From NCBI RefSeq assembly GCF_006345805.1, contig NC_042998.1, positions 40,486,001-40,550,000 on the forward strand: DNA of 64,000 nt, read 5' to 3'. This DNA is from Octopus sinensis. Lineage: Eukaryota. Shown here one piece after another: positions 3,212-41,953 of this stretch. The notes beneath the pieces are model-generated. The model had not been told where the DNA came from, did no database searches, and saw nothing but the letters and a program-made list of their open reading frames with translations. The position numbers and the translations under genes are program-made. Each line of letters starts with the position of its first letter. The first letter of the stretch is position 1.

Positions 3212-41953
<38,742 letters not shown>

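What the first reader, a model, noticed from the sequence alone, without database searches (positions are those of the whole stretch)
5751..5766. Catalase exon 9 has no usable GT donor: the frame demands G|TTAAGT
Seen: the minus strand reads AAC CAA G TTAAGT AATTT, and exon 10 acceptors (3363, 3360) are both phase 1, so the intron must start at TT (5761-5760). The site matches MAG|GTAAGT everywhere except +1. The adjacent GT (CAA|GTTAAGT) is phase 0 and gives a frameshift and early stop in exon 10. Reading through hits TAA two codons later. All nine other donors are GT. Known: /GUUAAGU is the atypical 5' splice-site class recognised by shifted U1 pairing (human INPP4A, GTF2H1), but cleavage there is at GU. 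Inference: the options are an assembly error or null allele (G+1>T), a genuine TT-AG intron, a weak upstream donor (CAG T|GTGTAA, which deletes about 5 aa), or a hidden micro-exon. One speculative micro-exon candidate is a 1-nt exon ag|G|gtaaaa at 4390, downstream of a T15 tract and a CTAAC.
Basis: partly seen in the sequence, partly recalled or inferred. Interest (0 to 1): 0.7.

Follow-up and report, generated by a model that had tools for sequence, protein, structure and literature searches.

The report
Real TT-start intron in octopus catalase
Intron 9 of the octopus catalase gene really does begin with TT instead of the near-universal GT; the change is fixed in three Octopus species and has the same sequence (AAG|TTAAGTA) as a rare, already documented class of working human splice sites, so it is a genuine curiosity and an annotation trap, not an assembly error or a new mechanism.

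Summary
Catalase lies on the minus strand, with exons 1-10 in the window. Nine donors are GT. Exon 9 ends AACCAAG|TTAAGTAA (TT = 5761-5760), and only this phase-1 cut joins exon 10 in frame.

It is not an assembly error. The window is 100% identical to Octopus sinensis GCA_006345805.1, and the separately assembled O. vulgaris and O. bimaculoides genomes carry the same CAAG|TTAAGTA. Argonauta (CATG|GTGAGT) and a cuttlefish (CAAG|GTAAGA) have a canonical GT at the same position and phase. So intron position +1 changed from G to T on the Octopus lineage.

A 12-exon model using the TT donor reproduces both RefSeq catalases exactly (512 aa). An octopus transcript from another species reads ...CAAG|GAGGAG.

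The motif equals the human natural TT 5' splice sites FBXO9 (aAG|TTAAGTAT) and ETV1 (aAG|TTAAGTtg). Reporter assays show these are cleaved at G|TT, sometimes mixed with the GT one base upstream.

- **Verdict:** a genuine U2-type TT-AG intron, a new member of a known rare class.
it creates a TGA stop.
- **1-nt micro-exon:** unnecessary and only weakly supported.
- **Unresolved:** there is no RNA from a TT-bearing species here, and the share of out-of-frame cleavage is unknown. Exons 10-12 show oddly high non-synonymous change (12 N : 2 S).

The parts
5762..5900 (-). Catalase exon 9 (139 nt, starts phase 0, ends phase 1), encoding [46 protein letters not shown] plus the first base of a Gly codon
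   Evidence: tblastn with catalase and splice-site reading. It is 100% identical in O. vulgaris and 98.6% in O. bimaculoides.
5754..5764 (-). Non-canonical 5' splice site AAG|TTAAGTAA (positions -3 to +8). T at +1 is 5761, and a second GT sits at +5/+6 (5757-5756).
   Evidence: It matches 8 of 11 positions of the U1-complementary consensus CAG|GTAAGTAT, against 7-9 for the gene's other donors. It is identical in O. vulgaris, and O. bimaculoides differs only at +8. The motif is the same as human FBXO9/ETV1 TT sites.
5761..5762 (-). Competing GT one base upstream (the '-1 register', CAA|GTTAAGT). It has 5 of 11 U1 matches in its own register.
   Evidence: Use with either exon 10 AG gives a frameshift, a 420-aa product and a premature stop 74 nt before the exon 10-11 junction.
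3364..5761 (-). Intron 9 (2398 nt), TT...AG. It begins with an (ATT)n-rich stretch and carries repeated SINE-like elements.
   Evidence: The homologous intron is 2435 nt in O. vulgaris, 1943 nt in O. bimaculoides and 353 nt in Argonauta (GT-AG).
3212..3363 (-). Catalase exon 10 (152 nt, phase 1 start) after acceptor tttatttacacAG|GAGGAACT. An alternative AG 3 nt downstream gives a start at 3360.
   Evidence: The acceptor is conserved in all three Octopus species and in Argonauta.
5856..5857 (-). In-exon canonical GT (TAG|GTTCTA, phase 1), used by the O. vulgaris model CAI9718555. It deletes 32 conserved residues.
   Evidence: P0122 reads ...HRHRLG|GTPNYY. The site has 5 of 11 U1 matches.
4388..4392 (-).
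   Evidence: It is present and conserved in three species, but it is one of five AGGGT in the intron, its acceptor is poor, and the CTAAC is lost in O. bimaculoides.
3212..41953 (-). Catalase gene, exons 1-10: 41953-41897, 21779-21608, 19071-18961, 16745-16615, 15542-15492, 13864-13685, 9592-9401, 8144-7992, 5900-5762, 3363-3212. Exons 11 and 12 lie beyond the low end of the window.
   Evidence: The full 12-exon model in L004 translates exactly to XP_029654814.1. Pfam PF00199 and PF06628 hit that protein.

Best explanation
Intron 9 of Octopus catalase is a genuine major-spliceosome (U2-type) intron whose first base mutated from G to T in the lineage leading to Octopus sinensis/vulgaris/bimaculoides, leaving a TT-AG intron. 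Every other position of the donor still fits the consensus (AAG|TTAAGTA). U1 snRNP can therefore still dock with a single central mismatch, helped by the flanking GTs at -1/+1 and +5/+6. The 5' cut is made after the G (G|UU), which is the only cut that keeps exon 10 in frame and yields the 512-aa catalase. Shown here: the genomic TT in three species, the ancestral GT in two outgroups at the same position and phase, an intact ORF only with this junction, and identity of the motif with experimentally validated human TT sites. Inferred: that this is the junction used in Octopus RNA, and the U1 docking and cleavage mechanism itself. By analogy with the human reporter data, some transcripts are probably also cut at the GT one base upstream, giving a frameshifted, stop-containing by-product.
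For: (1) The sequence is CAAG|TTAAGTA in O. sinensis (= the window, 100% identical over 43,953 nt), O. vulgaris and O. bimaculoides. Their introns differ by 1.6-5% and many indels, so the assemblies are independent; the O. vulgaris assembly is de novo ONT/10x/Omni-C. (2) Argonauta hians has CATG|GTGAGT and Acanthosepion pharaonis has CAAG|GTAAGA at the same codon position and phase. The cuttlefish junction is confirmed by its own transcript. (3) A 12-exon model using G|TT...AG|G translates exactly to RefSeq XP_029654814.1 and XP_014783590.1. All 11 other splice junctions in all three species are GT-AG. (4) An octopus metatranscriptome contig (SRR3401912) reads AACCAAG|GAGGAGCT, and a cDNA-derived octopus catalase (AGZ63441.1) has DNQGGAPNYY. 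(5) The donor matches 8 of 11 U1-complementary positions in the TT register against 5 of 11 in the GT register, within the 7-9 range of the gene's other donors. (6) No canonical alternative works. Every in-frame GT/GC in exon 9 deletes at least 17 conserved residues and has 2-5 of 11 matches; the rest give stops. (7) Literature: human ETV1 has a constitutive TT-AG junction (PMC4176328). TT ranks second after GC among non-canonical donors. FBXO9 aAG|TTAAGTAT and ETV1 aAG|TTAAGTtg are cleaved at +1, and accurate +1 cleavage depends on a GT at +5/+6, which the octopus site has (PMC6280755).
Against: No RNA from a species known to carry the TT donor could be examined. The protein collection holds no transcript-derived catalase fragments from O. 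sinensis, O. vulgaris or O. bimaculoides. The two mRNA-level sequences come from other octopod species whose genomic donor is unknown. RefSeq models could in principle rest partly on protein alignment. The O. vulgaris annotation, built with RNA-seq and Iso-Seq, offers only three aberrant isoforms: an in-exon donor, intron retention and exon 9 skipping. That could reflect canonical-only filters, or a really inefficient junction. Within Octopus, exons 10-12 show 12 non-synonymous to 2 synonymous changes, against 13:16 in exons 1-9 (Fisher p = 0.02). This hints at weaker constraint downstream of the odd donor. A U at intron +1 should disturb the G+1/G-1 contact used in exon ligation (discussed in PMC6280755).
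Confidence: 0.78

Rival explanations
1. Leaky or decaying junction: the spliceosome mostly cuts at the canonical GT one base upstream (CAA|GUUAAGU, the shifted-register class), or retains or skips. Most catalase transcripts are then frameshifted and degraded, with the in-frame product only a minor species. The gene's C-terminal exons would be drifting.
For: The human FANCC +1G>T site and high-complementarity TT sites are cut at -1, or at both -1 and +1. FBXO9, whose -3 to +7 sequence is identical to the octopus site, used both registers. The O. vulgaris annotation contains only aberrant isoforms. N:S is 12:2 in exons 10-12 within Octopus, against 13:16 upstream.
Against: The 117 downstream codons are intact, with no stops or indels, in three species, whereas the flanking intron has many indels. 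Residues invariant across cephalopods stay invariant apart from three positions. Exons 1-9 are still under purifying selection (dN/dS about 0.25), which makes no sense for a truncated, presumably non-functional catalase. No second catalase turned up for Octopus. The dN/dS signal rests on 14 changes in a region that is intrinsically more variable.
Confidence: 0.1
2. Two-step removal through a 1-nt exon or recursive site. CAA|GT is spliced to an internal ...AG|G, which regenerates CAAG|GTAAAA; this is then spliced to exon 10, so all four cuts are canonical.
For: ag|G|gtaaaa at 4392-4388 exists downstream of a T15 tract and is conserved in three species. It would give the correct mRNA.
Against: AGGGT occurs 5 times in the intron (1.6 expected), and conservation equals the 95-98% background. 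Two AGs (ctaacAG, atggAG) lie between the T-tract and the proposed acceptor, so it is not the first AG. The CTAAC is deleted in O. bimaculoides. The regenerated donor GTAAAA is weak. The direct TT route is experimentally established for this exact motif in human cells, so the extra step is not needed.
Confidence: 0.04
3. The real major isoform uses the canonical in-exon donor TAG|GTTCTA (5857), as in O. vulgaris CAI9718555, giving a catalase that lacks 32 residues.
For: It is the only GT in exon 9 with a -1 G that stays in frame, and an evidence-based pipeline annotated it.
Against: It deletes [32 protein letters not shown]. Most of this is invariant across cephalopods and still perfectly conserved in all three Octopus species, with 0 amino-acid changes in exon 9. 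The site has only 5 of 11 U1 matches.
Confidence: 0.03
4. Sequencing or assembly error, or a private null allele of the sequenced animal.
For: A single-base oddity at the most conserved splice position is the usual signature of an error.
Against: The same T is present in three species sequenced with different technologies by different groups.
Confidence: 0.01
5. The intron is GT...CA (CAA|GTTAAGT ... TTTACACA|GGAGGA), meaning a canonical donor with a non-canonical acceptor.
For: It gives the same mRNA, so alignments cannot distinguish it.
Against: Outgroups place the homologous borders at G|GT...AG|G. The CAG acceptor is conserved while the change is at the donor. No CA acceptor class is known, whereas the TT donor class is.
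Confidence: 0.02

Closest known systems
Human natural TT 5' splice sites of FBXO9 (aAG|TTAAGTAT) and ETV1 (aAG|TTAAGTtg) (Parada et al. 2014, PMC4176328; Erkelenz et al. 2018, PMC6280755)
   Same: The motif is identical from -3 to +7 (AAG|TTAAGTA). A GT is present at -1/+1 and at +5/+6. The 3' end is AG, the site sits in a constitutive coding junction, and the intron is otherwise U2-like.
   Different: It is in a mollusc housekeeping antioxidant gene. Usage is inferred here, not measured. It arose by a datable G-to-T change within octopods. Position +8 is A/G rather than T.
FANCC c.165+1G>T pathogenic donor (atG|TTAAGTAg) and reporter TT sites
   Same: The same +1 G>T change in a TTAAGT context. 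It shows that both the -1 (GT) and +1 (TT) cuts are possible.
   Different: In FANCC the change is a disease allele. In Octopus it is fixed in at least three species with the reading frame maintained.
Shifted-register /GUUAAGU 5' splice sites (Roca and Krainer 2009, as cited in PMC6280755)
   Same: The same heptamer, GUUAAGU. U1 would pair identically.
   Different: Those sites are cleaved before the GU and are in frame there. Here that cut destroys the frame, and the functional cut must be one base downstream.
FGFR1-3 GA-AG introns, and other conserved U2-like non-canonical sites such as BANP GT-GG (PMC4176328)
   Same: They are evolutionarily conserved, efficiently used non-canonical dinucleotides embedded in an otherwise strong consensus with a nearby GT.
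   Different: A different position is affected: +2 or the 3' site, rather than +1.
U12-type (minor spliceosome) AT-AC/GT-AG introns
   Same: They can also lack GT-AG termini.
   Different: The /RTATCCTT donor and the TCCTTAAC branch box are both absent here.

Membership tests
U2-type non-canonical TT 5' splice site (..G|TTAAGT.. class) | TT at intron +1/+2 with an AG 3' terminus | tested here: met
   CAAG|TT...CACAG|GA by direct reading; the same in three species.
U2-type non-canonical TT 5' splice site (..G|TTAAGT.. class) | All other donor positions fit the U1-complementary consensus | tested here: met
   8 of 11 matches (-2, -1, +2 to +7), within the 7-9 range of the gene's canonical donors.
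U2-type non-canonical TT 5' splice site (..G|TTAAGT.. class) | Auxiliary GT at -1/+1 and at +5/+6 (linked to use and to accurate +1 cleavage in PMC6280755) | tested here: met
   G(-1)T(+1) and G(+5)T(+6) are present; the criterion comes.
U2-type non-canonical TT 5' splice site (..G|TTAAGT.. class) | The junction is observed in RNA of the species that carries the TT | not testable with these tools
   Only indirect support exists. RefSeq proteins are reproduced exactly by the TT model. Transcript or cDNA from two other octopods shows the same junction. No transcript fragments from the three TT species are in the collections.
U2-type non-canonical TT 5' splice site (..G|TTAAGT.. class) | Not an alignment artefact or polymorphism; conserved in related genomes | tested here: met
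   Three species share it, and the outgroups have GT at the same site.
Shifted-register GUUAAGU donor cleaved at GU | Cleavage before GU yields the functional, in-frame mRNA | tested here: not met
   CAA|GT joined to either exon 10 AG gives a frameshift and a stop after 25 codons.
U12-type intron | /RTATCCTT donor and TCCTTAAC branch site close to the 3' end | tested here: not met
   The donor is TTAAGTAATTT, and the last 50 nt (taatttaaaatatttatatatgaaaatcaattcattgtttatttacacag) contain no such box.
Recursive splice site / 1-nt micro-exon | A strong polypyrimidine-AG acceptor directly followed by a regenerating GT donor, conserved above background | tested here: inconclusive
   The site is present and conserved, but it is not the first AG after the T-tract, the CTAAC is lost in O. 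bimaculoides, it is one of five AGGGT, and conservation equals the intron background.
Monofunctional haem catalase (host gene) | Catalase core (PF00199) plus catalase-related domain (PF06628), full-length ORF | tested here: met
   The model is identical to XP_029654814.1, which carries both Pfam domains. It is 67-96% identical to human catalase per exon.

The most novel reading that the evidence does not exclude
The TT donor may work as a two-register site. G|UU would give catalase, and |GU one base upstream would give a frameshifted, decay-prone RNA. Octopus would then set catalase output post-transcriptionally, or tolerate a chronically inefficient catalase gene. The excess of amino-acid changes in exons 10-12 would be the evolutionary trace of that. 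A still more exotic variant is removal through a 1-nt exon.
Probability: 0.12. Interest if true: 0.55.

Novelty: new member of a known kind. Interest (0 to 1): 0.35.

Why it matters
The site shows that the exact AAG|TTAAGTA context which lets human spliceosomes use a U at intron +1 has also been fixed in a mollusc housekeeping gene. The direction of change (GT to TT) and its rough timing are clear: after the split from argonauts. That supports the idea that tolerance of this particular non-canonical donor is an old property of the animal spliceosome.

There is also a practical consequence. The site misleads annotation pipelines that accept only canonical junctions.
- All three O. vulgaris catalase isoforms in GenBank (CAI9718555, CAI9718556, CAI9718557) avoid the true junction and are probably wrong.
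- The old O. bimaculoides UniProt model carries a spurious VKWR insertion.

Anyone using these proteomes for antioxidant-gene or orthology work inherits truncated catalases.

Tried and rejected
- **Transcript fragments.** A second database search used a 148-aa exon 8-10 fragment to catch partial octopus transcripts. The best hit was 78% identical, with no octopus fragments. Same-species RNA evidence could therefore not be obtained, and the third search was not spent.
- **Cluster look-up.** Only one transcript-derived member was found, from an unidentified 'octopus' metatranscriptome (SRR3401912, PMC11662614).
- **VKWR in A0A0L8G7Y6.** I tried to derive the VKWR insertion of the old O. bimaculoides model from the v2 sequence. 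No GTTAAGTGGA or equivalent exists, so this is left unexplained.
- **RNA genes.** Rfam at gathering thresholds and ARAGORN found nothing in the window, so there is no snRNA or tRNA gene nearby.
- **Literature.** Searches for octopus or cephalopod non-canonical splice sites found nothing on this site.
- **A-to-I editing.** Rejected by reading: the offending base is U in the transcript, and no A-to-G change converts either border into GT-AG.
- **U12-type intron.** Rejected by reading.
- **Upstream donor.** CAGT|GTGTAA is rejected because it gives TGA.

Full report
**What is there.** The window carries a catalase gene on the minus strand. Reading the borders gave these exons:
- Exon 1: 41953-41897
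- Exon 2: 21779-21608
- Exon 3: 19071-18961
- Exon 4: 16745-16615
- Exon 5: 15542-15492
- Exon 6: 13864-13685
- Exon 7: 9592-9401
- Exon 8: 8144-7992
- Exon 9: 5900-5762
- Exon 10: 3363-3212

Joined, they give an uninterrupted 446-residue catalase. Exons 11 and 12 lie off the low end of the window. Nine donors are GT and all acceptors are AG. Exon 9 alone ends AACCAAG followed by TTAAGTAATTT.

- Exon 10 (cacAG|GAGGAACT, or AG|GAACT three bases on) is phase 1.
- Reading through gives CAA GTT AAG TAA.
- Cutting at CAA|GT shifts the frame and stops after 25 codons, 74 nt before the next junction.

Two details need correction:
- The proposed upstream donor AGT|GTGTAA is phase 1 but contributes a T, so the junction codon is TGA.
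- The borders are formally ambiguous by one base, because GT...CA would give the same mRNA.

**Is it an error?** No. The reverse complement of window 1-43953 is identical to Octopus sinensis GCA_006345805.1, CM016860.1. I fetched the catalase loci of O. vulgaris (GCA_951406725.2), O. bimaculoides (GCA_001194135.2), Argonauta hians and the cuttlefish Acanthosepion pharaonis through their annotated proteins.

All three Octopus species read CAAG|TTAAGTA. Their intron 9 sequences are 98.4% (O. sinensis/O. vulgaris) and 95% (versus O. bimaculoides) identical, with hundreds of gapped columns, so these are independent sequences. The O. vulgaris assembly is a de novo ONT/10x/Omni-C assembly, and O. 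sinensis is PacBio/Hi-C (PMC10700109).

Argonauta reads CATG|GTGAGT and the cuttlefish CAAG|GTAAGA, at the same codon position and phase. The cuttlefish junction is confirmed against its own transcript. The simplest history is a G-to-T change at intron +1 on the branch leading to Octopus, after the split from argonauts.

**Is the TT junction the one that matters?**
- In each of the three Octopus genomes, a 12-exon model that cuts G|TT and joins to AG|GA gives a clean 1539-nt ORF.
- For O. sinensis and O. bimaculoides it reproduces the RefSeq proteins XP_029654814.1 and XP_014783590.1 residue for residue.
- An octopus metatranscriptome contig from another species (SRR3401912; 'octopus' in PMC11662614) reads AACCAAG|GAGGAGCT.
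- A cDNA-derived octopus catalase (AGZ63441.1) has DNQGGAPNYY.
- No canonical alternative is credible. Every GT or GC in exon 9 that keeps the frame deletes 17-45 conserved residues and matches only 2-5 of 11 U1-complementary positions; the others give stops.
- Exon 9 has no amino-acid difference among the three species, which rules out the 32-residue deletion annotated in O. vulgaris.

**How it most likely works.** In the TT register the site matches 8 of 11 positions of CAG|GTAAGTAT (-2, -1, +2 to +7). That is the same range as the gene's nine canonical donors (7-9). In the GT register it matches 5.

This exact motif is a documented class:
- Parada et al. 2014 report a constitutive TT-AG junction in human ETV1 among 184 U2/U12-like non-canonical sites (PMC4176328).
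- Erkelenz et al. 2018 rank usage GC > TT > AT > GA > GG > CT.
- They studied '..G TTAAG.A' sites in reporters.
- They show that FBXO9 (aAG TTAAGTAT) is cut at both -1 and +1, and ETV1 (aAG TTAAGTtg) only at +1.
- They find that accurate +1 cleavage depends on a second GT at +5/+6 (PMC6280755).

The octopus site is AAG|TTAAGTAA (AAG|TTAAGTAG in O. bimaculoides). It is therefore identical to FBXO9 from -3 to +7, and it has both auxiliary GTs.

I conclude that it is a U2-type TT-AG intron of this class. The genomic facts are shown. The usage of G|UU in Octopus RNA, and the U1 docking and cleavage mechanism, are inferred. By the human analogy, a fraction of transcripts may be cut at the -1 GT, giving a stop-containing by-product.

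**Rivals.**
- *Micro-exon at 4390.* The ag|G|gtaaaa exists and is conserved. However, AGGGT occurs five times in the intron (1.6 expected). Two AGs precede it after the T-tract. The CTAAC is deleted in O. bimaculoides. Conservation is no higher than background.
- *A-to-I editing.* It cannot repair a U.
- *U12-type intron.* The signals are absent.
- *GT...CA borders.* These contradict the outgroup borders.
- *Leaky or decaying junction.* This cannot be excluded without RNA data, and one observation points that way. Between O. sinensis and O. bimaculoides, exons 1-9 carry 13 non-synonymous and 16 synonymous changes. Exons 10-12 carry 12 and 2 (Fisher p = 0.019; pairwise dN/dS 0.25 versus 1.65). 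Against the outgroup transcript, the downstream dN/dS is 0.25. The numbers are small, the C-terminus is intrinsically variable, and the test is post hoc. The downstream ORF is intact in all three species, and most cephalopod-invariant residues are kept. I record this as unexplained.

**Annotation consequences.** The O. vulgaris GenBank annotation offers three catalase isoforms, all of which avoid the junction:
- an in-exon donor at 5857 (480 aa)
- intron retention ending DNQVK* (397 aa)
- exon 9 skipping with a frameshift (374 aa)

The pipeline used STAR, minimap2 splice:hq, StringTie, Portcullis and PASA. From my own knowledge, these favour or require canonical junctions. The older O. bimaculoides UniProt model A0A0L8G7Y6 replaces the junction Gly with VKWR. 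I could not derive that from the current sequence.

**Verdict.**
- It is a new member of a known, rare kind. It has modest interest for splicing evolution and practical value for cephalopod annotation.
- Interest is 0.35.
- The decisive missing piece is junction-level RNA evidence from a TT-bearing species.

Noticed in passing
L004 40591-55969 and L001 36938-49614 (exons 10-12; only exon 10 is in the window, 3363-3212): Within Octopus (O. sinensis versus O. bimaculoides), the exons downstream of the TT donor carry 12 non-synonymous and 2 synonymous changes, against 13:16 in exons 1-9 (Fisher p = 0.019). Against an outgroup transcript the same exons give dN/dS of about 0.25. This could be relaxed constraint or chance.
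   Followed up: partly
L002 (O. vulgaris GCA_951406725.2), gene 2001-56542: All three annotated O. vulgaris catalase isoforms (CAI9718555, CAI9718556, CAI9718557; 480, 374 and 397 aa) avoid the TT junction and are truncated or internally deleted. The same genome encodes an intact 512-aa catalase if the TT donor is allowed.
   Followed up: yes
P0127 (UniProt A0A0L8G7Y6, O. bimaculoides) versus L001 34994-36938: The old O. bimaculoides model reads DNQVKWRGAPNYY. The extra VKWR cannot be derived from the current assembly's intron 9 by any simple reading.
   Followed up: partly
P0001 (AGZ63441.1, labelled Octopus vulgaris): The cDNA-derived 'O. vulgaris' catalase is only about 95% identical to the catalase encoded in the O. 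vulgaris and O. sinensis genomes, and it keeps ancestral residues that both lack. It probably comes from a different octopod species.
   Followed up: partly
window 5700-5735 and about 5330-5690 (minus strand, intron 9): The intron opens with an ATT/ATC-rich microsatellite, then repeated SINE-like elements ('...gttctgagttcaaattccgccaaggtcaactttgcctttcat...'). Two copies each contribute a cag|G|gt or tag|G|gt motif (window 5576 and 5339). ARAGORN calls no tRNA there.
   Followed up: no
window 21780-41896: The first catalase intron is 20,117 nt, far longer than the others (1.1-4.1 kb). In Argonauta hians the whole gene spans under 16 kb, with a 353-nt intron 9, which illustrates intron expansion in Octopus.
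   Followed up: no
window 3204-3211 (minus strand): The exon 10 donor AAG|GTTAGT has T at +3, the weakest canonical donor of the gene together with exons 4 and 7 (7 of 11 U1 matches). It is conserved in all three species.
   Followed up: no
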